A DNA stretch of 64,000 nt from Haplodiscus bocki (lineage: Eukaryota), in contig OZ296651.1 of the NCBI GenBank assembly GCA_965655095.1, positions 39,990,001 to 40,054,000 of the forward strand. Reading direction: 5' to 3'. The translations under genes were made by a program, and so were the position numbers. The notes beneath the pieces are model-generated. The model did no database searches. It saw only the letters and a program-made list of their open reading frames with translations, and was not told the DNA's origin. This document shows positions 43,886 to 56,830 of the stretch, piece after piece (position 1 is the first letter of the stretch; each line of letters opens with the position of its first letter).

Positions 43886-44323
43886 GGTTACGCTTTGGTG
43901 GTTTCAAAAAAATGTTTGAAATCATTTTTTTGGGCGGCCACAAACAAAAAACAGTTAATGAAAATTATTAATTCATAGATTCCAGCGGTAAAGCTTACTT
44001 GTATGTACTTGCAAGTAAAAAATAACAAAGCTAGATCCAAAGCACAAGGCTAAAATTTGATACATGTCCGAGTCTAAGAAATCGGCTACCGTTGTTGCAA
44101 ATTTGTTTCAACAAAATGTCAACACGACCGGAATGATCAACCAGTGAATTAATAATGATAAATTTTGGGCTTGGGTATTTGTCCTGCCACCGTTGCAATT
44201 AATGTTTCATTAATTGGAAGTTTTCAGATTCGAGTGTTCTGGCAGTATAAATTTTGATGGCAAACATTTACTTTCTTGAATTCCAACGACTCTGGGCGAA
44301 GCAAAATAATTGACTGGTTTCAG

Positions 44324-44848
44324 GAAGTCGTTGATTTTGAAGATCTTTCCAAATCGAAAGATCTTTTCACGGGCTGTGAAGTGGGCTACTGTGGATTAGG
44401 CACAACACGACGTGATTCTGGGGCAACTGGCTTTGTAAAAGTGGATTATGACTATATCATGGCCGTGGCCAAATTGGCCAAAAAACAGGATTGCAAGCAG
44501 TTCCATCTCATATCTGCCGTTTGGGCTAATAAGAGCAGTCCTGTGTTGTACACTCAGATCAAGGGCAAGGTCGAAGCTGAAGTCACTGATCTTGGATTTG
44601 ATCAATTGTTCATCTATAGGCCAGGGTTGCTCCTGCGGGGTGAGAAGACCCGTTGGGGTGAAAAGGTTTACGGAGCACTCATGAAACCTGTCACAATTTT
44701 CAAGCCTGAAGCTGGGCAAGTTTCTGTTGAAGTTGTGGCAAAATCTATGCTCAAGAAAAGTGAACTGTACGGTGTTGGAGAAACCGAAAAGATGACTCTG
44801 CTGACTAATGCTGATATTCATAAAGTTTCCAAAGAATTGAACGATTAA
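44324..44848 (+). CDS. HTATIP2: Oxidoreductase HTATIP2/TIP30, coding exon 2
   Basis: Acceptor tttcag; EVVDFEDL...CGLGTTR...GFVKVDYDY...QFHLISA..AN..S..LYTQIKGKVE...IYRPGLLL. Spliced product is 230 aa with the SDR YxxxK motif. Confidence 0.95.
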   Translation, partial: EVVDFEDLSKSKDLFTGCEVGYCGLGTTRRDSGATGFVKVDYDYIMAVAKLAKKQDCKQFHLISAVWANKSSPVLYTQIKGKVEAEVTDLGFDQLFIYRPGLLLRGEKTRWGEKVYGALMKPVTIFKPEAGQVSVEVVAKSMLKKSELYGVGETEKMTLLTNADIHKVSKELND

Positions 44849-45361
44849 TGGAATAACCCAATGGGAGGTATTGTAATGAATTAATCCTGAATGCTGAATT
44901 TTTCTTCCTTCATTAGTCTGCCTGATATTGAAGATGAATTTGTGTCTGGGTTGAAGTATCGTAACTTATCAAAACCGCTGAGTGTTTGAAATATTTTTTT
45001 GAAATATGTTTTCCTGTTGTGTGAATCTAGGGATTGATACAAATGTTAGTAGCCATTTAAATACTAGGACGCACAGTAGCACTGTGATATTTTCGGCCGC
45101 CAGTTGTTCAGAGTATCGCGTTACACATAACGCTTAAACGTTAATTAATTAGAACATGATTAATTAGTTAAAGCTAACCTTTTGTGAGGGTTTGAATGTT
45201 GATATAAAAGTATAAAAAAGCTGGTGAAATAAATAACCGTTGGAGTTGCACAATTCATTTTCACAAAAAATTCTAACCAGAGCTATTCTCATATTGGCTC
45301 TTGCTGCTAACATGCTTGGTACAAGCCAATTTTCTATTGGTTGCATGAAATGGCAGCATGC

Positions 45362-47090
45362 TGTTATAATGGAGTCGACCTGCGAAGCTGACTCAATCAT
45401 AATTTTCCTTCCAGCTTAACGGACGGGACTCCTCACTCCTCTTCTGACTTGCTTTACTCTTCTCTTCTCCCTTTTACTGGGACAAATTATTCTAAGTTCA
45501 ACTCCCTTTCTCCCTTTTATTCTTTTGGACAAATTTATTCTAAGTCCAATTCCTCTTCCCTCTTCTCTTCGGACGGATTTATTCTAAATCAAAATTCCAT
45601 TTTCTCTTTGCTCTTTCCGGACTAAAAGTTCTCAGTCCAACTCCAAATTGAAAGAAATATTCTACATCAACTTTTCTTTCTGACTTTGAAAAATTCCCTC
45701 TTTTTGATTACCCATTCCATACTCTTGCCACTGGAGTCTAAACAGTGTCCACTAACGCTTGCTTCAGTATTAGCCTGTGCGGATTCCGCTGACGAGCTCC
45801 GGTTCTGAAGCAAGAGTGGATCTTAAACTGCACGACCCTCACGAGGTTCCTCGAAAGAGATTGGCATTACATAGTAGACCAAGTCTCACCTCGTCTGCTG
45901 CCGTGGTAATTCAGAATTCATTAAATTCTTAGATACGGTTTAAATATGCAGAAACCGTCCCTTTTGTAAACATACTAAAACAATTTCTTGTTCTCAAAGT
46001 TCCTATTTGGTCCTATTGCGAGTCAGATTTACAAGAAGAAAGTCCCAGAACAACACGCAGATCACCCGACTCTATCAGCAGTATCCGTAACTTAAAGAAT
46101 TTTCTAGTCCGGAATGAGTACATCTATCTGGTCAATCCTAATATTCGTTCTTCTGAATCCCTCCCATAAAATCCGGTAGATACTAGTCTCGGTTGGAGAA
46201 AAAGGGACTAAGAGAAACTCACCAGGTTCCTGCTTGAAGCGAGCTTTTACCTGAGTTTTAGATAAAACCTAAAATGTTTCAAACCCCGCCAATAAATCCG
46301 CAGATTTATTCACGTCTTGGGAAAGTGGGGAAATTAAGCCACTTCAACCAGTTGCTATGATAACGCAAGTACTGAGTGTAAGTGAAAGACTAAAATAACT
46401 TCAATTAAAAAAAGTCACGTAAATCGCCCGTCAACGGCTCACACCTGATCAGAAGAGGATATCTATGTTTCAAACAGTAGACGGCGAATTGCCAGTTACT
46501 GTGTTTAGACAAAAGCATAGACTTTATTTGTGACATATTTAAGTAAAAGTAAAAAACAAAATTTAGCAAAAACTAAACAAAATAAAACCAACAGTGCTAG
46601 AAACAACGAATAACAGAATTTTCGCCCTAGCCTAAAACCATAAAAACTCCCTCTATACCTCGTTTTGTTATTCAATACTTTCCAGAACTACTTGAATGTT
46701 TCGGTCATTTCATCTATCTTCACAATTTCGGATTTGGATTCATCATATGATTTTTTATGTTTTCGGATGCTTTTTTGTGGTTCATATTTTGATGAATGGT
46801 GATGGCTTATAACTTACAGGATTTTACCTGATCTTTCATAGAATTGATAATAATTGCTTTGGTCCAGCCATTTTTTATTTCTGATGATTAATTCGCCGAT
46901 GCTTATATAACTGATAGGAAAACTGTCCCAGTTTGAGGAGGTAAACAAAACTTTTCTTTACTGAATTTTTTGTAAAGAAGACTTGATCAGAATGAAATTT
47001 GGGAATATTCACGGGGGACGAAGAATTTTACGTGCAGGAATGAATTTTACTGGAGTAAATCGAAAATGCTGTTTATGGTGATATCGTTAT
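45362..47090 (-). mobile_element. 3' fragment of a Gypsy-like element (integrase C-terminus plus non-coding/LTR-like sequence)
   Basis: Minus-strand remnant RFTP..KKWL..RSGK.. at 46670-47090. TGTTAT at 45362 looks like an LTR terminus; short internal repeats GGACAAATT.ATTCTAAG. Confidence 0.35.
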
Positions 47091-48270
47091 TCTACACTGT
47101 TGCTAATTGACAATTCTTTTCCCTCTCTGGTTGTTGTAGTCATGATGATTAAGGTCCCAGATTGCACAGTCGTGCTTTCATTTCATCAAACGCATTCCGT
47201 TTCCCTTGGTAATCTGAACAATTGCTCATTTCATTTTCTATTTTCTTCCATCGCTCATAAAGTCCTGGCTATTGAACTTACGCAATCTTTGCTCGCGGAG
47301 CCAGCTTGGCAACAAAAATAGAGAGATAAAAGCTCCAGAGACTCGTTCTGTTTATTAACAAAACAACTGACGCGCGGCTACCTTAATGGAGTGTTATTCA
47401 TGCGCCGTTCTAAGCTGACTGGGAGTTAGAGCTAAATAATATTTGCAATTTTAACCGCTGGTACTTTCTACTGCTACATGCTCTGGAACAAACTGGTGCG
47501 ACCAGTGGGACATATTCAATTTTTTTTCTGAGCGATATATTTGCAATTTATTTCTGCGCTAAATGTTTTTCTTTATATTTCCTTTAGTAACATTTATTCT
47601 TTTCAGATCACTGGGAATTTTAACAGTTGCTCTGATTAGAATACTCTCATCCAGCAATTCCCGAATTTTTCCTGTATAAACCTTTCAGAATGAAAACCGA
47701 TTTGATTCTTGCGCTATATTTTTCCTAATTCCTGTTATCGCCCTACTCCTGACACCTACCTATCTCCTAGCAGTTTCTGAATTGGTAAAAATGATCCGTA
47801 ATCGAGATTACGGGAACTAGAATTGATTCGGTGATAACTCCAATTTAACTAAGACCTGGTTGAACTGAAAATGTGCATTTGTATTGTTTCAATCGTTTTT
47901 TTAATTTCATGTAAACACCTGATGCCCCAAAACGTCAAAAGTTTGATACTGGATTTGGACGAAATACCTGAGGACGAGTGCAAACATATTTCACTAAATT
48001 GCCCCTGGACTATAACCTCCAAAGACGAGAACCTAACAGTTATTGTAACCTGTGTAAAATGGACTTTTAACTATGAGATCTGTGTACGAGTAAGAGCCCA
48101 TCCACAGGGAGCGCCAAATACTTCGAAACAAATAGACCTAGATTATCATCACTCCATTGCTTAGATGTTTAACTGACGCACTTAATTTATACGAAGCTTT
48201 TGCTAAGCCCCAACTTGATATCATGGGAGTATTATTAGAATACCTGGTTCTCAATTTCTGCTAGAACACT

Positions 48271-49700
48271 ATGGCTCGTGCCCTCCTTGCATACCCCGAT
48301 CTAGCTGTCGATAAGTTCTCTGGCACAGATCCTGACCAAGATGACGAATCATTTATCCAATTAATTGAACGAAAGATCAATTTTGCTCTCGGTGATGCAC
48401 CTGCAGATGCTGACGATTTCGCAAACTACTTTTTCAGGAAGAAAGCGCTGTTCTCTTCTTTACTTTGAGGACCAGCCCCTGAGTTGTATGAAAAGAACAT
48501 CACCAATGCTACTACCTGGGAAAATGTCCGAACAAATTTTATCACTAGATTTTCAGACGGACGAAGTAAATTTCGATACAGAATGGAAGTGGAACATTGT
48601 ATCAGAGGAGATGGAGAAGAAATTCGAAACTTTTCACACCGTATCAAAAGAACGGTTGACAAAGGCTGGCCCGATGATATGAATGCTATTGAGGCCGCTC
48701 AACAAAATGAAGAACAAACTCAAGCACCACAAAGATGCATCGACTACTCAATGAAAGGACTCAGGCCTAGATACCTTCAAGGAAAAACATCAGATTATGC
48801 GATGGAAAACCTGAATCCTACGAGGAATGAATTTTCAACTCGAATAATTCTGAGAGACGTGTCTTTCCAAGTATCCTCTAACTTCTTGAACGATGAAGAG
48901 CAGACCAAAGCCCAAATGGCTCCATTGGGAAAGAAATGAGAAACCTACGAGCGTAACTGCAAGAACATCGAGTTAATGCTGTAGAAGGAAACCCTCGAAC
49001 ATTAGACCGAAACCAAAAAGGAAAGCAAAACGCAACATGATTTTGCAACTACTGCTGCACAAACGGACATACCCCAAGTTGGTGCCGCAAGAAGATACGA
49101 GACGAAGAACTGAAACGAATCGAAAACGAAAGCACGGTCGAGAAAGAAGGCACGTTTACTCAGGACTACAACAAAAAGCGAGGACCAGGCCATGGATCAG
49201 AACAATGGACTTGAGGTCAAGGTTTCCAAAGAAGAAAACAGAACTACTCTAACGATGGTTCTACGAGAAATTTCCCTACTGCTTATCAGAATTTCTCTCC
49301 CAGACTTCACATACGGGAACAACAATCCGAATAACGGAAGATCATATGATCCAGGCCCAAACCAGCCATTGAGTAAAAACGATGGAACTCGATCTCGAAA
49401 TGGATCTTTCAACAATCATAACGGAAACTGGCAAAACAATAGAAATTTGACTCGTTCTCCATCGACTCAAAGGGAAGACTTTTCACAAAATAATTCATAC
49501 CGCCAAGCAGGAAGTGATCAACCTCACAATTCTGCCTCCCGCAGATCTGACAATCGACCTACGACTGGTTTTGCGCCAAACAAAAACTACGAACAAATTT
49601 CCAGAAAACAATAACCAGACGTCTACTAATGTAGGATCGCTTCACCACAACCGATGTTTTCATTAATGAATTATCAGACCTTTGCCCGTTTAACTACTAA
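48271..49700 (+). pseudogene. Gag with zinc knuckle (disrupted)
   Basis: DKFSGTDPDQD.ESFIQLIERKI..., WENVRTNFITRFSD, and CNYCCTNGHTPSWC (C-x2-C-x4-H-x4-C, 49044-49085). Several stops and frameshifts. Confidence 0.85.
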
Positions 49701-50516
49701 GGTATCCTAACTAGAACACCCACAATTCTTGAATTTCCCGACAGCCTCAAAATCTACTTCGCTACCGGAGACACTCAAAATGTCAGTGGTTTGGAGATTG
49801 AGTTCATGTTGGATCCAGGAGCCTCTTGCTCAATCATTAATTACCGAACCTTTTGGGAAATCTGTCAATTACAGCTACCAATTGCTATACAAAAGAGTAC
49901 CAAAGCAACAAAAACATGCTCAGGACAATTATTTCCTATTATTGGCTACGCGACTATATTTTTTAGTTATGACGCAGATGGACAATTCATCTTCCCACTA
50001 GCCATATGGATCACTGAGATGAGGACTCAAAATCTCCTTGGAATGGACTTCTGCGAAAAGCAAGTTTCTCAAATTCTTTTTAATCTACCTGGGATTGAGA
50101 TAAAGAACCCTCTCAAGTCAATCTGCTATGGCAGTTTTCACCAAAACAAACCTTACCCTCATTTATCACAAATTTTGACTATAAGAACCCCCTATACGAT
50201 GTGTATTGATGCTAAGAGTGCCCGTTGTTGGAAATATTCGCCCACAGACACTCATACACACTTCCCACCAGGATCAACTTTTCAACCGAATCGAAATGCT
50301 GTGGCTAACGGCCTGTCCTTTATCAACACTTTTTGCACTCGATCTGAACGTAATCTCCCGATACTGATGGAAACTAACAAGAATCATCAGATAACATCAC
50401 CAAAGGGACAGATTGGATTTTCTTCTCTTGACTTGGTTGATCGGAATGAACCCAAGTACCAAATACGAAGTCCTTACGAGTTGACGAACGGTATCATCTC
50501 TTTTGATGAGAGATAA
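49701..50516 (+). pseudogene. Pol aspartic protease plus following beta-rich linker
   Basis: IEFMLDPGASCSII (D-[T/S]-G altered to DPG)...NLLGMDFC. Confidence 0.88.
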
Positions 50517-50569
50517 AACGATTGTTTTCTCTTACATTCAACAGTTCCAGCTCAGAACAGTGACGAATT

Positions 50570-51000
50570 TCTACAATTTATCTATGGAACTGGATATTCT
50601 ATCCTTCACCAACCTAATTCAATTTGTCATTGCATCTCTGCGGACGCCCGATTCGGTAAAAGTTTTGCCGACTTCCTATCCCACCGAATCCCTGGGCTCA
50701 GATCAACCTGCCGTAACGCAAAGCTTTTCATGGGACAAGTCTATTCCTTCTGGGATTAAAGTGGAATTCGTTATATCTACAATCTTGTGACTAAAGAAAT
50801 GTTTTGCGATAAACCCCCACCCCTATCGACACTGTCTGAAACGTTAGAAGCAATGAAGATTCATGCAGGTACGAATGGCGTTTCTACTATTGCTATACCC
50901 AAACTTGGCTGTGCACTGGATCAAATGAATTGGCAGGAAATGGTGAAACTACTCCTTGATGTCTTCGGTTATGCTGACGTACAGATTGTAGTATACACTC
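50570..51000 (+). pseudogene. TARG1/OARD1 (Poa1p-like) macrodomain inside Gypsy pol
   Basis: In frame with the protease: ICHCISADARFGKSFA...RYIYNLVTK...TIAIPKLGCALDQMNWQEM...VQIVVY. One internal stop at ~50757. Confidence 0.88.
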
Positions 51001-51199
51001 TTGAGGAAAATGGAGTCCACGCGATGTCCGCTGAAGGCGACGCTGAGTTCTACGCTGACGATAAGATAGAACGATACAGTGAAGAATTCTTCCTCGAAAA
51101 CCGTGAGTTAGAAACAGACTTTACTGAGGACTCTAAATCCTGCCAACCGACCTGTGACGAGCAATTCCCAGTCCGTCGCGAGAAAGATCACAACAAAGT

Positions 51200-52680
51200 T
51201 CTAGGTTATCGAGTTTCCAACTCACGGTAGCTTTAATTTCTAACTCGGTCACAAAATGTTAGATCTCAACCTTGGGACGGCGATGCGCCTGGTCTCTTGG
51301 CTTGCTCTATTCGTAGTTCGATTCTTTTTGTCAATTTTGCGGCCGGCGCAAAAACAACAGCGGCCGTAGTGTGCACGCTCTCAGTTTTGCTGTCAACATC
51401 AATGGCAACCTCGCTTTCAGCGCACTGACTTATATCATCGTGGTCAAAGTTTTTGTTTCGGTTCGTTGTGGATGCAGTGGAGGTGCTGGCCGTAGGTGTC
51501 ACGATAGTCGTAGAAGATTGTGGAGAAACCTAGTATTGCTCGGCCTCCAGGACTTCTTCCCTCTCTAATTCCGCCCTGATTGTGGTATGCATTGGTCCCC
51601 GCCATTGAAATCGCGTACTCGATGGATTCCCGCTGCCTGCGGCGCGTCATCTGGGAGAGCTAAATATCTCGCGAAGGTCAACCAGAAATTCGTTTGTTCC
51701 GGCCCCTCTAACGATGCTTTGAACACGGCTAACAAAATGACCCTGAACATCTCGCAATAGATGCTCAACTGCAACCACGGCGGGTACCATAGGCCATCCA
51801 TTGCGCAGTACTTTTCTAGATAAAAGTAAACATAGTCGGATTTCGGTCTCGCGCGCTCAATTTTGTTGAGTTGTTGTAAGAATTAAAAGTAACTCAAATT
51901 CTGATAGTGAGTGGTATGACTCCTGCCATTTGCGGCATGTTTGCCCCTGCAACTTCACTTGGTGGATGCGGTACTTGCAACCTCACATGTCTAACTACTT
52001 CTTCATTCTTCGGAACGTGGTCATTCTGTCTTCTGATATCATTCTCGGCATCTCCTAACGCAATGTTCAATGCCTGATTTTGTGGGATTGTACCCCTAAG
52101 TTCTTTTTCTTCTGGTTGCCATTCTGGTTTTTCGTTGGGACGCCTACTGAGACCATCCGCGTTAGTGTTTCTCTCCTGGAGGGTGTACAGTTCTATAGTC
52201 ATACTCTTGCATCTTTTGGATCATTCTAAATGTCATACCGTTGGCGTTCTGCCTGAAAAAATCATTGTAAACTCGCGTGATCCGTTCTAACAATACACTG
52301 CGTTCTGTAAATATAAGGTTGGAACCATTGCATCGCCTGTACATTTCCTAGTGCTTCTCGTTTCGTTGTTGCATAATTTACCTCGGTCTTGGAAAACACT
52401 CTAGACTCGAACGCCACGGGTCGTTCTTCTTCAATCACTTGCGACGAAACTGCTCCAAGAGCAATCTCACCAGCATCCGTGTCTATCACGAAAGGATAAG
52501 AAAAGTTGGGAAAAGGCAGAATTGGGGCTTGCAAAAGTCTCGTTTTTAGCAGCTGGAATGCTTCTTCATGCTCTTCATTCCAGTGGAATTTCACGTCCTT
52601 AGTAGTTAACGCGTAAAGGGGCTTCGCTACTTCTGCTGATTTTCGCACGAGTTTCCCTTAATAATTACAGAATGAAGTAA
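51200..52680 (-). mobile_element. Inverted Gypsy fragment: RT thumb/RNase H plus 3' ORF
   Basis: AKPLYALTTKDVKFHWNEEHEEAFQLLK...FVIDTDA...PVAFESR...NYATTKREAL...VRTDHASLQ...NADGLSRRP. Confidence 0.92.
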
Positions 52681-54373
52681 ACGATCTGACTTGAGTAACT
52701 GTTTTCGGGCGTTCCCAGTTTCTAAAGAGCAACTGTCCCACAGTTCAACTCACTCTTGTTTTGCGGTTCTGTATTGCCTGTCTTTCGTTCCCGGCACTAC
52801 TAAGTTTTTTTCGCCGCTAGGTGTGTCCCCTTTTTGTCGTTTTAATGAAAATCATCACTTTTGCTATTTTGGCGTCAGTTGTTACTAATTGCAAATTCTG
52901 TTTCAGCCTCATTTTTCGGTATTAGTCAATTGTTTTCGGCGTGTTTCGGTAATAATGAGGTGTCGAGTTCAAGATAATGACTAGGTGGTTCGTGGTTCAT
53001 AATCGATTTTTGGTCATTATGATGTCATTTTTCTGAACGTATAATTTTTCAGGGATGGGGTGGTTATTTATTGTTAGTACATTCGAAAAGGAGTGTTTTA
53101 ATGAAAAGATGAGCTCTCTACTTGGTCTCAACAAAAAGTGGTCAATTTTATGTAAAAGTACCGATTTTGGCCTTTTTGGACTACCTAGGTCCACCTTCAA
53201 AGTCGATTCGTTCAACGTACAGGTAAAATTTCGAAAAATCCTTAGAATGTTTACGGGGGGGGGGGGTTATTAGGAACATTGTGTTGAATTTTGAGCTTTC
53301 TATCTCTGAGAAGGTGCGGGGGGGGGCTATCCGTTTTGCAAGTCGACATTTTCCAAAATCCGTGATTTCAGCTAGTTGTAATATTATCGGGAGGCCATTT
53401 GTAACTTGTTACGCTTGTTCTTTTGTTATTTTCCCTTCCTCTTATTGATAAATTTCCGAATACTAGCATTGCGGTCGATTTCTGTTGGGTAATCGTTGAC
53501 TATTAAGCGAAAAACTGTGATTTTCGTCGATTTCACTGTATTTTGGGCGTTTTTTGGACATTTCTTCCCTAGTTCTCCAAAATGACTGTATATCATCGAT
53601 TCATCTTTTCAGGGACATTATTCCATCCAAATATCTTCCGATTAAGGTTATTCCGAGCGTTTTGTGATGCGTGGTTCACTCGTAATGAGTTTTTAACTGA
53701 ACTCAATTCACCAATTTCTGCAGTGCACTTTTCCTTAGCAACATTTTTTCATCGTCTTAATTTCGTCCGATTTTGCCCATATACCAAACCTAAACTTTCC
53801 TATAGATGTAGTTTACAATAGTGAGAACTGTTTGTCGATATCTTTTTTCTTCTCCGAGAAATAGGAATGCAGACATTGGTGACTATTTAAATAAAGGCTC
53901 TAATTTTGGGTGGCGAGACCGTGAATATGCTAATACGTGGGGTGGCAGCAGCTGTGCGCGTGGTCAGAAATCACTTCAAATTCACTCCTATTGTATTCTT
54001 TTTGTATCTATAACAATTTGTTTTCATTCTGCTCTCTTTTTCATGCGCTTCTAAAGTTGCAACTGAACTGCGAATTCGCCATGCCACTGTTTTCCGGACC
54101 GTAATACTTTTCGTTTTAACTTTTCAGCAGCTTTTAATTTTCAGAATGCGATGAAAACACCCGACATGTTTTGCTTGGAAATTAGTTTTAGTTGGTGAGA
54201 ACAGTTTTGCTCTATCTATCATAGTTTTCAAGAAAATTGACGTTAAATTTCGATTTCGAATTAGACCACCTTTCAAATTTTATGCTGCTGTAGCTTTGCT
54301 ATGTTAATACACACGTGCCAAGGCCTTCAAAATAAATTATCTTTGCTCTTCTGCTTGTTCTTGTTCCAACGTA

Positions 54374-55523
54374 ATGTTTATTCTGTTCAATATTCACTTT
54401 TCACGTATCACTCCCACTGCTAAATTTCACACAATTCACGTGCACCAACACAGCAAATCTATTATTACGAAATTGCCAAATGTGATTGATTTGGATTCTA
54501 AACGTAAACTTTTTTATTGTTCTAACTTCGAAACACGAAGTTTAAATGTTTTAGAGCTCATGGAAAGCATATTTGGTTCCGTGCCTCTCCATCCCGTCAA
54601 TATTGCACATTCTTTTAATAACGAAATTTGGTCCCGTTTCATTGTTCTTTCTAATTTTAATTTCACTGTAGACTCTCCCCTTGTCCCATGTATCTTGTCT
54701 ATTTTCAATGTAAAACCTCCAGGTGTATCCAAACTGTCTTGAGACCATCTTAATTTAATTTGGGAGCATGTAAATAATATCCCTTCTTGTCCCCTAATCA
54801 GCATCACCAAAGGTCCCGAATATGCCGGTACGCGTAACTTCACAAATTGTGTCCAAACCGATACGGATTTCCGCCACTGCTTATCCTCGTAATATTTTAC
54901 TGGCCATGTGGTTATCAGTTGTATGGGATTTTTGATGAAAGCACGTATTTCACTTTTGCAGTCACCGGAATCGGTGAGGGCGTTTCTTTCGCACTTTTAA
55001 TTCATTGTCAAAAAGATTTGTGTGCCTCATCTTTGTCTGCCGGCACATGCTTCTTCGAACTTTGTTGCCTCTCTGCCGATGGTTTTTTTAATACTCAATG
55101 CAGCGCGGTCCACGTGAACATGAGGCGCGTTGTTTACAATTTTCTATTGAATGTCCCGGCGATTTGATGTTTATTCTCCATCTCGCTCACGCTGTTCTAA
55201 CTTTGGATACTGGTTCGCCAATAACTTTGCCAGAATGGGACGCCGTTACCACTACAAATCGGCAAGTAATTGTTCAACAATTGGAAAATTGCACTTTTGG
55301 TGAACGTCGTGTTAAGTGGTACGAAATTTTCGTGAAAAAAGGTTTATCTGCGTTGCAGGAGTGGGTGTTTTCCCTTCAACAGGCCCCCAAGAAAGAAAGG
55401 AAAAGCAACAAAGACACTGGAAATTTAGGGTACAGCACTCTATCAGTTTTTTTATGTTCATTAATTGTCGAAAACGAGGTTCTCCGTAAAGTTGAAAGTA
55501 GTCGAGTCAACCCTATGCAGTAA
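54374..55523 (+). pseudogene. Intronless JmjC-domain-like relic
   Basis: STYFTFAVTGIGEGVSFALLIHCQK, then in another frame FSIECPGDLMFILHLAHAVLTL, which matches the JmjC C-terminal pattern Q.PGD.hFhP....H.V. Frameshifted. Confidence 0.5.
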
Positions 55524-55899
55524 TCCAAAATTCGTTAACCGCAAAAAGGGCGCTATTATTCTAGCTCCCTCTAGATGAATTAAGTTTTCATTGTTCTCTT
55601 TTCAGCTCTTCAACCTCTTCGGGCAAGTATTTATTTAACTTTTAACAGCAAATACTAGATAGTTGATCCATATTATCACTCGAAAGGAAAACTCTTTCTT
55701 CTTGATAAACTTTCCAAATTACCACCCCCCCCCGCCCCCCACGTGGACTACTACTCTCCCGAGTGGTTCAAGGATTCAAGGAGAATCAAAGTCCCTATCG
55801 GTGTTTTCATTCTTTCAGATTTCCTTGGGAGAACTCTGTCTTCCACCTTTTTTCCAATAATCTTGCAAGGAAAAAATTATATTTTTATTAGCTTTGAGG

Positions 55900-56830
55900 G
55901 TTGAGGAACTTACAACCCACGGTGGCTTTTGGTCTTTCCCGGGCACAAAGTCTTATATTTTAGTCGTGGGACATAGATCGACCCGCACTGGTTGTCCCTT
56001 CTTTCGGTTCCGCACATCTCTGGCATTTTCGCTGCCGGTGCGAAAACAGTGGTGGCAATCGTGTCCACACTTAGTATCACTTTCGACGCTGAGGGAAATT
56101 TCTCGTTCCACGCATTGGCTTATCGTCTCGCGATCGAATTCTCTGTTTTGGCCGATTGTAGACTTGGTAAAAGTGCTGGTTGTGGTTATTGTGATGGTTG
56201 AGGTGGCAGCGCTGCTGGGAATACAAGCCAACATGGCCAGCTGAATTTGGGCAGCCTCCACACGCGGGCATTTGGGAGGCCGAGGGTATATTTGATACTG
56301 TATGGCTCCCGGGACTTTTTTTGTAATTCGGTCCAAGCTGTGCTTTTCACTGGCCCCCTCCAATGAAAGCTCATACTAATGAAGTTTCCTGCTGTCTGAG
56401 GCGTATCATCTGGAAAGTTTAAGTACCTTGGAAATGTCAGCAGAAAGTTTTCATTCCGGTCGCTACTGGGAAGCTTTGAAGACGGCGAATAATTTTTCTC
56501 GGAACTTCTCTCAATATATACTTAGCTGTAACCATGGAGGGCACCACAGGCTGTTCAGTGCACAAGTTTTCCAGATGTGAGTACACGTAGTCGAAATTGG
56601 GCCTGGCTCTTTTTGTTTTAATCAATTTGTAAGAGTTGAATGGGTTTGTTACTCAGATGGTCAGGAGCGAGATTCCTGTCGTTTGGCATGTTGGCTCCCT
56701 CTACTTCGCTGGGTGCTGGATTGTATACCGTATGTGATCCCACAGCTTCGAAGTTCCTAGGTCTGGATTGGGCGGTCGGTGTTTTGTGGTGAAACGGTGG
56801 CATGATTCTTTTCTTTTTATTGGTTTTGAA
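55900..56830 (-). mobile_element. Diverged second copy of the Gypsy 3' region seen at 51200-52000
   Basis: PSEVEGANMP versus PSEVAGANMP; QNREFDRETISQCVEREISLSVESDT versus RNKNFDHDDISQCAESEVAIDVDSKT. Confidence 0.7.

What the first reader, a model, noticed from the sequence alone, without database searches (positions are those of the whole stretch)
50517..51197. Gypsy retrotransposon pol carries a TARG1/DarG-type ADP-ribose eraser macrodomain downstream of the protease
Seen: in the same frame as the protease (49791 to 50787 is a multiple of 3, with only two point stops) lies a full macrodomain with HCISAD, RYIYNLVTK and IPKLGCALD..NW. The RT is absent because the copy is cut at ~51197. Known: TARG1/OARD1 has the motifs HCISED, RYIYYLITK and MPRIGCGLD, with a catalytic Lys and Asp; both are retained here. 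TARG1 and bacterial DarG remove ADP-ribose from proteins and from DNA thymidine, and RNA viruses use macrodomains against host PARPs. Inference: the element family packages an anti-ADP-ribosylation enzyme in its polyprotein, implying a PARP-based anti-retrotransposon defence in this host. Macrodomains are known in some retroelements, so novelty depends on this position and lineage.
Basis: partly seen in the sequence, partly recalled or inferred. Interest (0 to 1): 0.85.

Follow-up and report, generated by a model that had tools for sequence, protein, structure and literature searches.

The report
TARG1-type macrodomain inside Gypsy pol
A dead, truncated copy of a very abundant retrovirus-like Gypsy element of an invertebrate carries, between its protease and reverse transcriptase, an ADP-ribose-removing domain that the whole element family keeps under selection as strong as on its core enzymes, which suggests (but does not show) that these elements must undo ADP-ribose marks made by the host.

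Summary
Window 49755-51203 (+) is the protease-to-macrodomain part of a Ty3/Gypsy pol. It has two in-frame TAA stops and is cut off before the RT. The domain is a TARG1/OARD1-type macrodomain: PDB E = 1.5e-25, and a predicted structure lies 1.5 Å from human TARG1. The catalytic Lys and Asp are kept.

It is not a one-off insertion. The genome gives at least 6,362 first-look matches. In about 40 of the 150 scored macrodomain matches, the domain and RT/RNase H lie in one uninterrupted pol frame of about 1,847 codons. Pairwise dN/dS on the domain is 0.16, against 0.15 for the protease and 0.14 for the RT. A second family, only about 40% identical in the domain, has the same layout and is equally abundant.

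Complete copies are large enveloped elements that also carry a class III fusion-glycoprotein gene and a TRAF-like MATH gene. Other retroelement Pols, including one from a weevil, carry TARG1-type macrodomains at two other positions.

The counter-PARP reading is plausible but untested. The closest published parallels are NADAR domains in Ectocarpus Gypsy Pol and macro-domain ORFs in fish retroviruses. First-stage readers of this scan noted the same element family many times elsewhere in this genome; none of those notes was checked.

The parts
45114..46334 (+). 5' terminal repeat (LTR-like) of the window copy, best-matching part
   Evidence: 74% identical to the repeat that bounds another copy on contig C2, and to the sequence that follows the last gene of further copies. 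The exact LTR end was not determined.
46335..48136 (+). Rest of the terminal repeat and leader, with patchy homology
   Evidence: Pieces up to 48136 match the 3' tails of other copies. No second repeat copy is present in the window.
48268..49304 (+). gag remnant, broken by stops and frame changes
   Evidence: tblastn gives 72-78% identity to the 489-aa gag of another copy. There is a weak Retrotrans_gag hit. Stops are visible.
49755..50513 (+). Aspartic protease (core 49797-50057, motif decayed to DPG), followed by a conserved region of about 160 aa of unknown fold
   Evidence: Sub-threshold Pfam protease hits in the window, stronger in another copy. The 160-aa region has dN/dS 0.18 and is 45-51% conserved in the distant family.
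50514..50516 (+). First in-frame stop (TAA)
50598..51014 (+). TARG1/OARD1-type macrodomain core. Lys codon 50793-50795, Asp codon 50919-50921. Interrupted by the stop at 50757-50759.
50757..50759 (+). Second in-frame stop (TAA), inside the macrodomain
51015..51203 (+). Start of the macro-to-RT linker. The copy ends here.
   Evidence: Homology to other copies stops at 51193 (DNA) or 51203 (protein).

Best explanation
The window holds an old, dead, 3'-truncated copy of a very abundant, retrovirus-like Ty3/Gypsy family of an invertebrate. Its layout is gag, then pol (protease, a 160-aa region, macrodomain, RT, RNase H, bridge, integrase), then a class III fusion-glycoprotein gene and a TRAF-like MATH gene.

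The macrodomain is a TARG1/OARD1-type ADP-ribosyl hydrolase translated as part of Pol. It would therefore be present in the particle beside RT and integrase.

Shown: its identity, its fixed position, its presence throughout the family and in a deeply diverged sister family, the retention of the catalytic Lys and Asp, and purifying selection as strong as on the protease and RT.

Inferred: the domain is catalytically active, and the element needs it to strip mono-ADP-ribose that host ADP-ribosyltransferases (PARPs) place on element proteins or on the ends of its RNA or cDNA. That would make it a counter-defence, comparable to the macrodomains of RNA viruses and to the dUTPase built into some retroviral pol genes.
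For: Identity:
- PDB phmmer gives E = 1.5e-25 to human TARG1.
- The AlphaFold model (pLDDT 90) matches TARG1 best, with TM 0.90-0.93 on the target, rmsd 1.5 Å and 33% identity. DarG macrodomains come next.
- Lys and Asp are near-invariant in a 63-sequence alignment (62 and 60 of 63) and are kept in all retroelement rows.

Position:
- PR, macro and the start of the RT lie in one 740-codon open frame in another copy, with RT/RNase H and integrase downstream.

Constancy:
- The genome gives at least 6,362 first-look matches.
- 142 of 150 scored matches have no stop.
- About 40 of them lie in open frames of 1,845-1,849 codons.
- At 55 or more places the macro match lies about 1,377 bp upstream of an RT/RNase H match in a frame of the same length.

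Selection:
- Pairwise dN/dS over 30 copies is 0.16-0.17 for the macrodomain, 0.15 for the protease and 0.14 for the RT, at dS of about 0.55.
- Of those 30 decayed copies, 25 keep the Lys and 29 keep the Asp.

Depth:
- A sister family is collinear over gag-pol. It is 51-53% identical over PR-macro and 73-81% over RT/RNase H. It has the same layout and at least 6,603 first-look matches, many in frames of about 1,886 codons.

Recurrence:
- TARG1-type macrodomains sit after RNase H in a Rhynchophorus ferrugineus Pol, and after integrase in two other Pols.

Context:
- The same macrodomain type is fused to PNKP, DNA ligase, a LIG3-type BRCT and TatD in cellular proteins. This fits a role at DNA ends.
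- The host has at least 31 PARP catalytic-domain matches.

Published parallel:
Against: There is no biochemical, expression or genetic evidence. No RNA run is on record for this organism. No host writer enzyme or substrate has been identified. Retention of catalytic residues does not prove activity, and it does not say which bond (protein Glu/Asp, nucleic-acid phosphate or thymidine) is cleaved. Purifying selection shows that the element needs the domain, not that the need is counter-defence. The window copy itself is inactive.
Confidence: 0.55

Rival explanations
1. The domain is an active enzyme but not a counter-defence. It would serve the element's own replication chemistry or metabolism. 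Examples are hydrolysing O-acetyl-ADP-ribose or ADP-ribose-1''-phosphate, or clearing ADP-ribose that DNA-break-sensing PARPs add at integration intermediates as part of normal repair.
For: TARG1-type macrodomains are fused to the DNA-end repair enzymes PNKP, DNA ligase and TatD. The authors of the Ectocarpus study proposed RNA processing for the NADAR domain of Gypsy Pol. The catalytic residues are kept.
Against: Most Ty3/Gypsy elements replicate without such a domain. The element also carries a TRAF-like MATH gene, which looks like host-signalling interference and fits a counter-defence toolkit better.
Confidence: 0.22
2. The domain acts as a reader. It would bind mono- or poly-ADP-ribose and tether the pre-integration complex to ADP-ribosylated chromatin, as chromodomains target chromoviruses.
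For: TARG1 binds poly-ADP-ribose as well as cleaving terminal ADP-ribose (established knowledge, not tested here). Chromatin-reader fusions to Gypsy Pol are common (PMC12477816; PMC13524379).
Against: Reader fusions normally sit at the C-terminus of integrase, not between the protease and RT. Reader-only macrodomains usually lose catalytic residues (established knowledge), while here Lys and Asp stay under selection.
Confidence: 0.12
3. The domain is a functionless passenger, or a host OARD1 exon that happens to lie next to a transposon in this window.
For: The window copy is broken and truncated.
Against: There are thousands of copies, with a fixed position inside one pol frame, dN/dS of 0.16, and conservation in a sister family at about 40% identity.
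Confidence: 0.02

Closest known systems
Human TARG1/OARD1 (C6orf130), terminal ADP-ribose glycohydrolase
   Same: Same macrodomain subclass. It is the best sequence match (E = 1.5e-25) and the best structure match (rmsd 1.5 Å). It shares the three signature motifs and the Lys/Asp pair.
   Different: TARG1 is a stand-alone cellular protein of about 150 aa. Here the domain is an internal part of a retroelement polyprotein, about 33-40% identical, with untested activity.
DarG antitoxin macrodomain of bacterial DarTG
   Same: Second-best structural class (Foldseek E about 1e-10), related to TARG1. DarG removes ADP-ribose from DNA thymidine (established knowledge).
   Different: Only 20-22% identical. 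No DarT-like partner gene was seen in the element. The biological setting is different.
Macrodomains of positive-strand RNA viruses (coronavirus Mac1, alphavirus nsP3, hepatitis E virus)
   Same: A macrodomain embedded in a replicase polyprotein. Those domains counter antiviral PARPs (established knowledge).
   Different: The viral macrodomain structures (alphavirus) matched far more weakly here (E about 1e-7). They belong to RNA viruses, not retroelements.
NADAR domain in Gypsy Pol of Ectocarpus and in oyster Tx1 LINE ORF1 (PMC12477816)
   Same: An ADP-ribose-processing domain, highly conserved, in the N-terminal region of a Gypsy Pol. This is the closest published analogue.
   Different: A different fold and family (YbiA/NADAR, not macro) in a different host kingdom. 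Its function is also unknown.
Fish epsilon-like endogenous retroviruses with macro-domain or CNPase ORFs (Basta et al. 2009, cited in PMC4977317)
   Same: Retroelements that carry a macro domain.
   Different: The review describes these as occasional additional ORFs in Retroviridae, not as a domain inside Ty3/Gypsy pol. The original paper is not held, so the subclass and position could not be checked.
dUTPase built into pol or pro of some retroviruses
   Same: An accessory enzyme embedded in the polyprotein and carried with RT, which counters a host condition harmful to cDNA (established knowledge).
   Different: Different chemistry and fold.
Env-carrying Ty3/Gypsy 'ancient errantiviruses' of metazoans (Chary and Hayashi, eLife 2026, PMC13524379)
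   Same: Ty3/Gypsy elements with a class III-type envelope gene and an RNase H-to-integrase bridge region, widespread in invertebrates.
   Different: That paper has no occurrence of macro, ADP-ribose, MATH or TRAF. The accessory domains described here are not reported there.

Membership tests
TARG1/OARD1-type macrodomain | Macrodomain fold (three-layer alpha/beta/alpha) | tested here: met
   AlphaFold model has pLDDT 90. Foldseek's top hits are all TARG1 structures, with TM 0.90-0.93 and rmsd 1.4-1.8 Å.
TARG1/OARD1-type macrodomain | Closer to TARG1 than to the MacroD, PARG, ALC1 or macroH2A classes | tested here: met
   PDB phmmer gives TARG1 E = 1.5e-25, DarG next at 3e-5, and no other class at E below 0.01. 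The Foldseek ranking agrees.
TARG1/OARD1-type macrodomain | Catalytic Lys (in LxTK) and Asp (in GCGLD). The residue roles come from published TARG1 work, recalled rather than tested. | tested here: met
   Aligned to the same motifs of TARG1. Lys is in 62 of 63 and Asp in 60 of 63 aligned relatives. Both are present in the window copy.
TARG1/OARD1-type macrodomain | ADP-ribosyl hydrolase activity | not testable with these tools
   Needs a biochemical assay.
DarG (DarTG antitoxin) | Paired with a DarT ADP-ribosyltransferase toxin gene | tested here: not met
   No such domain appears among the Pfam hits of the element's ORFs. The resemblance is structural only.
Ty3/Gypsy LTR retroelement (Metaviridae) | Pol order protease, RT, RNase H, integrase | tested here: met
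   Pfam on a fuller copy gives protease, RVT_1, RT_RNaseH_2, Integrase_H2C2, rve and SH3_Tf2-1 in that order. Only the protease and macrodomain survive in the window.
Ty3/Gypsy LTR retroelement (Metaviridae) | Ty3-type gag | tested here: met
   Retrotrans_gag PF03732 at E = 1.1e-5, above the cut-off, in a fuller copy. The window holds a weak remnant.
Ty3/Gypsy LTR retroelement (Metaviridae) | Long terminal repeats | tested here: inconclusive
   A terminal repeat starts at window 45114, recurs after the last gene of other copies, and is 96% identical between the two ends of the C2 copy. Its 3' boundary, primer-binding site and target-site duplication were not defined. The C2 copy is followed directly by a second copy.
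Env-carrying Gypsy (errantivirus-like) | Envelope fusion-glycoprotein gene downstream of pol | tested here: met
   A 623-aa ORF matches PF24664 at E = 6.5e-28 in a fuller copy. It lies at a constant distance of about 7.3 kb from the macrodomain in several copies. It is absent from the truncated window copy.

The most novel reading that the evidence does not exclude
ADP-ribosylation of retroelement proteins, or of the ends of their RNA or cDNA, is an old and widespread restriction pathway against LTR retroelements in invertebrates. Retroelements have answered it repeatedly by building TARG1-type erasers into Pol at three or more different positions, and NADAR domains in other lineages. In this host the eraser is combined with a TRAF-like decoy gene to form a retrovirus-style immune-evasion kit.
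Probability: 0.3. Interest if true: 0.85.

Novelty: new variant of a known kind. Interest (0 to 1): 0.66.

Why it matters
Macrodomains are established counter-defence enzymes of RNA viruses against antiviral PARPs. For retrotransposons, no ADP-ribose eraser has been tied to function.

Here a TARG1-type eraser is a selected, constant part of Pol in two deeply diverged, very abundant element families. The same domain type recurs at other Pol positions in unrelated hosts. Together these point to ADP-ribosylation as a pressure on retroelement replication.

This is directly testable with a 150-residue domain and standard de-ADP-ribosylation assays. It could reveal a PARP-based arm of genome defence in invertebrates alongside piRNAs. 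It would also show which substrate matters for reverse-transcribing elements: protein, RNA end or DNA end.

Tried and rejected
- **Pfam on the window pieces.** It gave only a sub-threshold Macro hit (E = 0.095). PF01661 covers TARG1-type domains poorly and the frame is broken. PDB sequence search and structure search settled the identity.
- **Word-indexed protein search.** It returned only short ORF fragments of the same family from one source, so it gave no outside view. The exhaustive representative search did.
- **Independent captures.** In the tree, the window family and its sister family form a starred clade of 10 rows. The weevil element's domain groups with insect OARD1-like proteins. 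An AU test does not reject one clade for all retroelement macrodomains (p = 0.52). The number of captures is therefore open.
- **Donor of the domain.** The host's own OARD1 gene could not be isolated, because element copies swamp any search.
- **LTR limits.** There is no direct repeat in window 44000-56000. Comparisons with the tails of other copies end at different points. The boundaries are left undefined.
- **The 160-aa region between protease and macrodomain.** I suspected a degenerate dUTPase-like barrel. There is no Pfam hit at E of 0.1 or less, and the AlphaFold model is unusable (pLDDT 36). The idea is dropped as unsupported.
No Pfam hit in that region of the copy examined.
- **Expression.** Only four runs from one study hold the sequence, and none is recorded as RNA. 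Read laying was not used, because contigs cannot show expression.
- **Host identity.** Names are coded. I can only say that mitochondrial COX1 has six in-frame TGA codons, which are read as stops under the code the tool used and so point to an animal mitochondrial code. That the host is an invertebrate is my reading of the same translation (Arg where Ser is usual, Ile where Met is usual), not a tested result.
- **Basta et al. 2009.** The paper is not held.

Full report
**What is in the window**

The frame opening at 49791 reads through an aspartic protease, a region of about 160 residues, and a complete macrodomain. There are two in-frame TAA stops, at 50514-50516 and 50757-50759.

- HCISAD at 50628-50645
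- RYIYNLVTK at 50769-50795
- IPKLGCALD at 50895-50921

Pfam alone is weak on the broken pieces (Macro E = 0.095, protease E = 0.009). The C-terminal piece still matches human TARG1/OARD1 in the PDB at E = 1.7e-15.

Comparison with a fuller copy gives the anatomy of the window copy:
- a terminal repeat from 45114
- a gag remnant at 48268-49304
- pol from 49755, with homology stopping at 51193-51203

So the RT, RNase H, integrase and everything downstream are missing. From 52310 to 52861 on the other strand lies an unrelated RT/RNase H remnant, 30% identical.

The copy is decayed. The protease motif reads DPG where another copy has DTG, and GCGLD reads GCALD. The comparison with its nearest relative gives dN/dS of 1.1 at dS 0.13, which is neutral drift after insertion.

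**What the domain is**

An unbroken copy of the domain from another locus (L036:3417-3929) matches TARG1 at E = 1.5e-25 over TARG1 residues 24-150. The LxTK lysine and the GCGLD aspartate align.

An AlphaFold model built on 63 relatives has pLDDT 90. Its best structural matches are all TARG1 entries: TM 0.90-0.93 on the target, rmsd about 1.5 Å, 33% identity. DarG macrodomains follow. Alphavirus and other macrodomain classes lie far behind.

In the 63-row alignment the lysine is present in 62 rows and the aspartate in 60.

**It belongs to the element, not to this one copy**

- The 681-base stretch has at least 1,825 first-look DNA matches in the 1.5-Gb genome.
- The protein has at least 6,362 first-look matches. 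Of the 150 scored, 142 have no stop.
- In one copy, the protease, the macrodomain and the start of the RT lie in a single 740-codon open frame. RT/RNase H, an integrase zinc-binding domain, the integrase core and an SH3 domain follow downstream. A 489-residue Ty3-type gag lies upstream.
- About 40 of the 150 scored macrodomain matches lie in open frames of 1,845-1,849 codons. Most of the 132 scored RT/RNase H matches lie in frames of the same length.
- At 55 or more places the two lists coincide, always with the macrodomain about 1,377 bases upstream of the RT/RNase H match. I compared the two lists by eye, and both lists are truncated.
- Many of these matches have identical scores. That indicates near-identical copies and hence recent amplification. 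I name no copy.

**Selection**

I aligned 30 copies in codon register. Thirteen have a macrodomain free of stops and indels. The lysine is kept in 25 and the aspartate in 29.

Pairwise Nei-Gojobori dN/dS, at dS of about 0.55:

| Region | dN/dS |
|---|---|
| Macrodomain | 0.16-0.17 |
| Protease | 0.15 |
| N-terminal part of the RT | 0.14 |
| 160-residue region before the macrodomain | 0.18 |
| Linker after the macrodomain | 0.105 |

Most of the divergence among subfamilies therefore arose while the domain was under constraint as strong as that on the core enzymes. Pairwise values over related copies are not independent, so this is a description, not a test statistic.

**Depth and breadth**

Two proteins from an ENA assembly are about 40% identical to the domain. 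They lie in elements that are collinear with the window family over gag and pol:
- 51-53% identity over the protease-to-macrodomain segment
- 73-81% over RT/RNase H
- 41-45% over the bridge and integrase

This sister family is also abundant in the window's genome. It gives at least 6,603 first-look matches, up to 95% identity, many in frames of about 1,886 codons. The arrangement thus predates a deep split within this retroelement lineage.

The exhaustive representative search found 2,670 relatives at E of 0.001 or less. Among them are Pol proteins with a TARG1-type macrodomain at other positions:
- after the integrase SH3 domain in two other sequences

Their RTs are only about 30% identical to this family's.

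A tree puts the window family and its sister in a starred clade. It puts the weevil domain near insect OARD1-like proteins. The AU test does not reject a single clade of all retroelement domains (p = 0.52). Repeated capture is therefore suggested by the different positions but not demonstrated.

The same domain type is also fused to PNKP, DNA ligase, a LIG3-type BRCT and TatD in cellular proteins.

**The element as a whole**

In fuller copies, pol is followed by a 623-residue ORF that matches the Monjiviricetes class III fusion glycoprotein family (E = 6.5e-28). A 457-residue ORF with a TRAF-type MATH domain comes after it.

Both are high-copy: at least 7,275 and 4,787 first-look matches. Both lie at constant distances from the macrodomain in several copies, about 7.3 kb and 10.7 kb.

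The family is therefore a large, enveloped, retrovirus-like Ty3/Gypsy lineage. It is of the kind described as widespread in invertebrates by Chary and Hayashi (PMC13524379). That text does not mention macro, ADP-ribose, MATH or TRAF.

**Mechanism**

*Shown:* a TARG1-type domain with an intact catalytic pair is translated within Pol, and the element family needs it.

*Inferred:* it is an active ADP-ribosyl hydrolase carried with RT and integrase, and it removes ADP-ribose placed by host enzymes.

From established knowledge, not tested here:
- TARG1 removes Glu/Asp-linked mono-ADP-ribose from proteins.
- TARG1 also reverses ADP-ribosylation of nucleic-acid ends and of thymidine in DNA.
- Viral macrodomains counter interferon-induced PARPs.
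- PARP13/ZAP restricts retroelements in mammals.

The host genome has at least 31 PARP catalytic-domain matches. Several lie in very long open frames, and some cluster on contig C12. This shows that writers exist, not that they target the element.

I put 0.55 on active counter-defence, 0.22 on an enzymatic but non-defensive role, 0.12 on a reader or targeting role, and 0.02 on a functionless passenger. The remaining 0.09 is left for explanations not listed here.

**Novelty**

In the paper library I found no description of a macrodomain inside a Ty3/Gypsy Pol.

The nearest published cases are two:
- occasional macro-domain ORFs in fish epsilon-like retroviruses (Basta et al. 2009, via PMC4977317)

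I therefore rate this a new variant of a known kind: accessory enzyme domains in retroelement polyproteins, and viral macrodomains.

First-stage readers of this scan have noted macrodomain-bearing enveloped Gypsy elements many times elsewhere in this genome (174 notes fit the word). All the notes shown were unchecked, and I did not count them as evidence.

**Limits**

- There are no expression data.
- The host name is coded.
- LTR limits are undefined.
- The host OARD1 gene was not isolated.

Noticed in passing
L037:5456-7324 (+), a fuller copy on contig C2; absent from the window: A 623-aa ORF downstream of pol matches the Monjiviricetes class III fusion glycoprotein family (PF24664, E = 6.5e-28). 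The genome gives at least 7,275 first-look matches. This makes it an envelope gene of the same element family.
   Followed up: partly
L037:8203-9573 (+), same copy: A 457-aa ORF just before the 3' terminal repeat has a TRAF-type MATH domain (PF21355, E = 2.2e-15). The genome gives at least 4,787 first-look matches, many with no stop inside. It is a candidate decoy of host TRAF signalling.
   Followed up: partly
L036:2982-3494 (window equivalent about 50040-50513): The region of about 160 residues between the protease and the macrodomain is as constrained as the enzymes (dN/dS 0.18). It is 45-51% conserved in the sister family. It has no Pfam match, and its AlphaFold model is unusable (pLDDT 36).
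   Followed up: partly
G000, contig C12, about 72.98-74.38 Mb, and other contigs: PARP catalytic-domain matches lie in very long uninterrupted frames (1,680-2,474 codons). Several are clustered. They may be a diversified set of large single-exon PARP genes. Their sequences could not be fetched.
   Followed up: no
L046 against L047 (contig C2, 23.449-23.472 Mb): The 3' terminal repeat of one copy runs on, at 96% identity over 2.7 kb, into leader and gag sequence. Two elements therefore appear to lie head to tail and share a repeat.
   Followed up: partly
window 52262-52861 (-): A remnant of an unrelated LTR retroelement (RT_RNaseH_2 E = 6e-29, only 30% identical to this family) lies about 1 kb beyond the truncated end of the copy.
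   Followed up: partly
proteins P0227, P0257, P0261, P0265 (public collections): TARG1-type macrodomains are fused to polynucleotide kinase-phosphatase, ATP-dependent DNA ligase (one with a LIG3-type BRCT) and a TatD DNase. This links the domain type to DNA-end repair.
   Followed up: partly
G000, many contigs: Most of the 132 scored RT/RNase H matches, and about 40 of the 150 scored macrodomain matches, lie in uninterrupted frames of about 1,846-1,847 codons with near-identical scores. The sister family shows frames of about 1,886 codons. This indicates recent amplification.
   Followed up: partly
L044 (contig C6626): This is a mitochondrial contig. COX1 has six in-frame TGA codons, consistent with an animal mitochondrial code. 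ND4-like sequence lies directly upstream of COX1.
   Followed up: no
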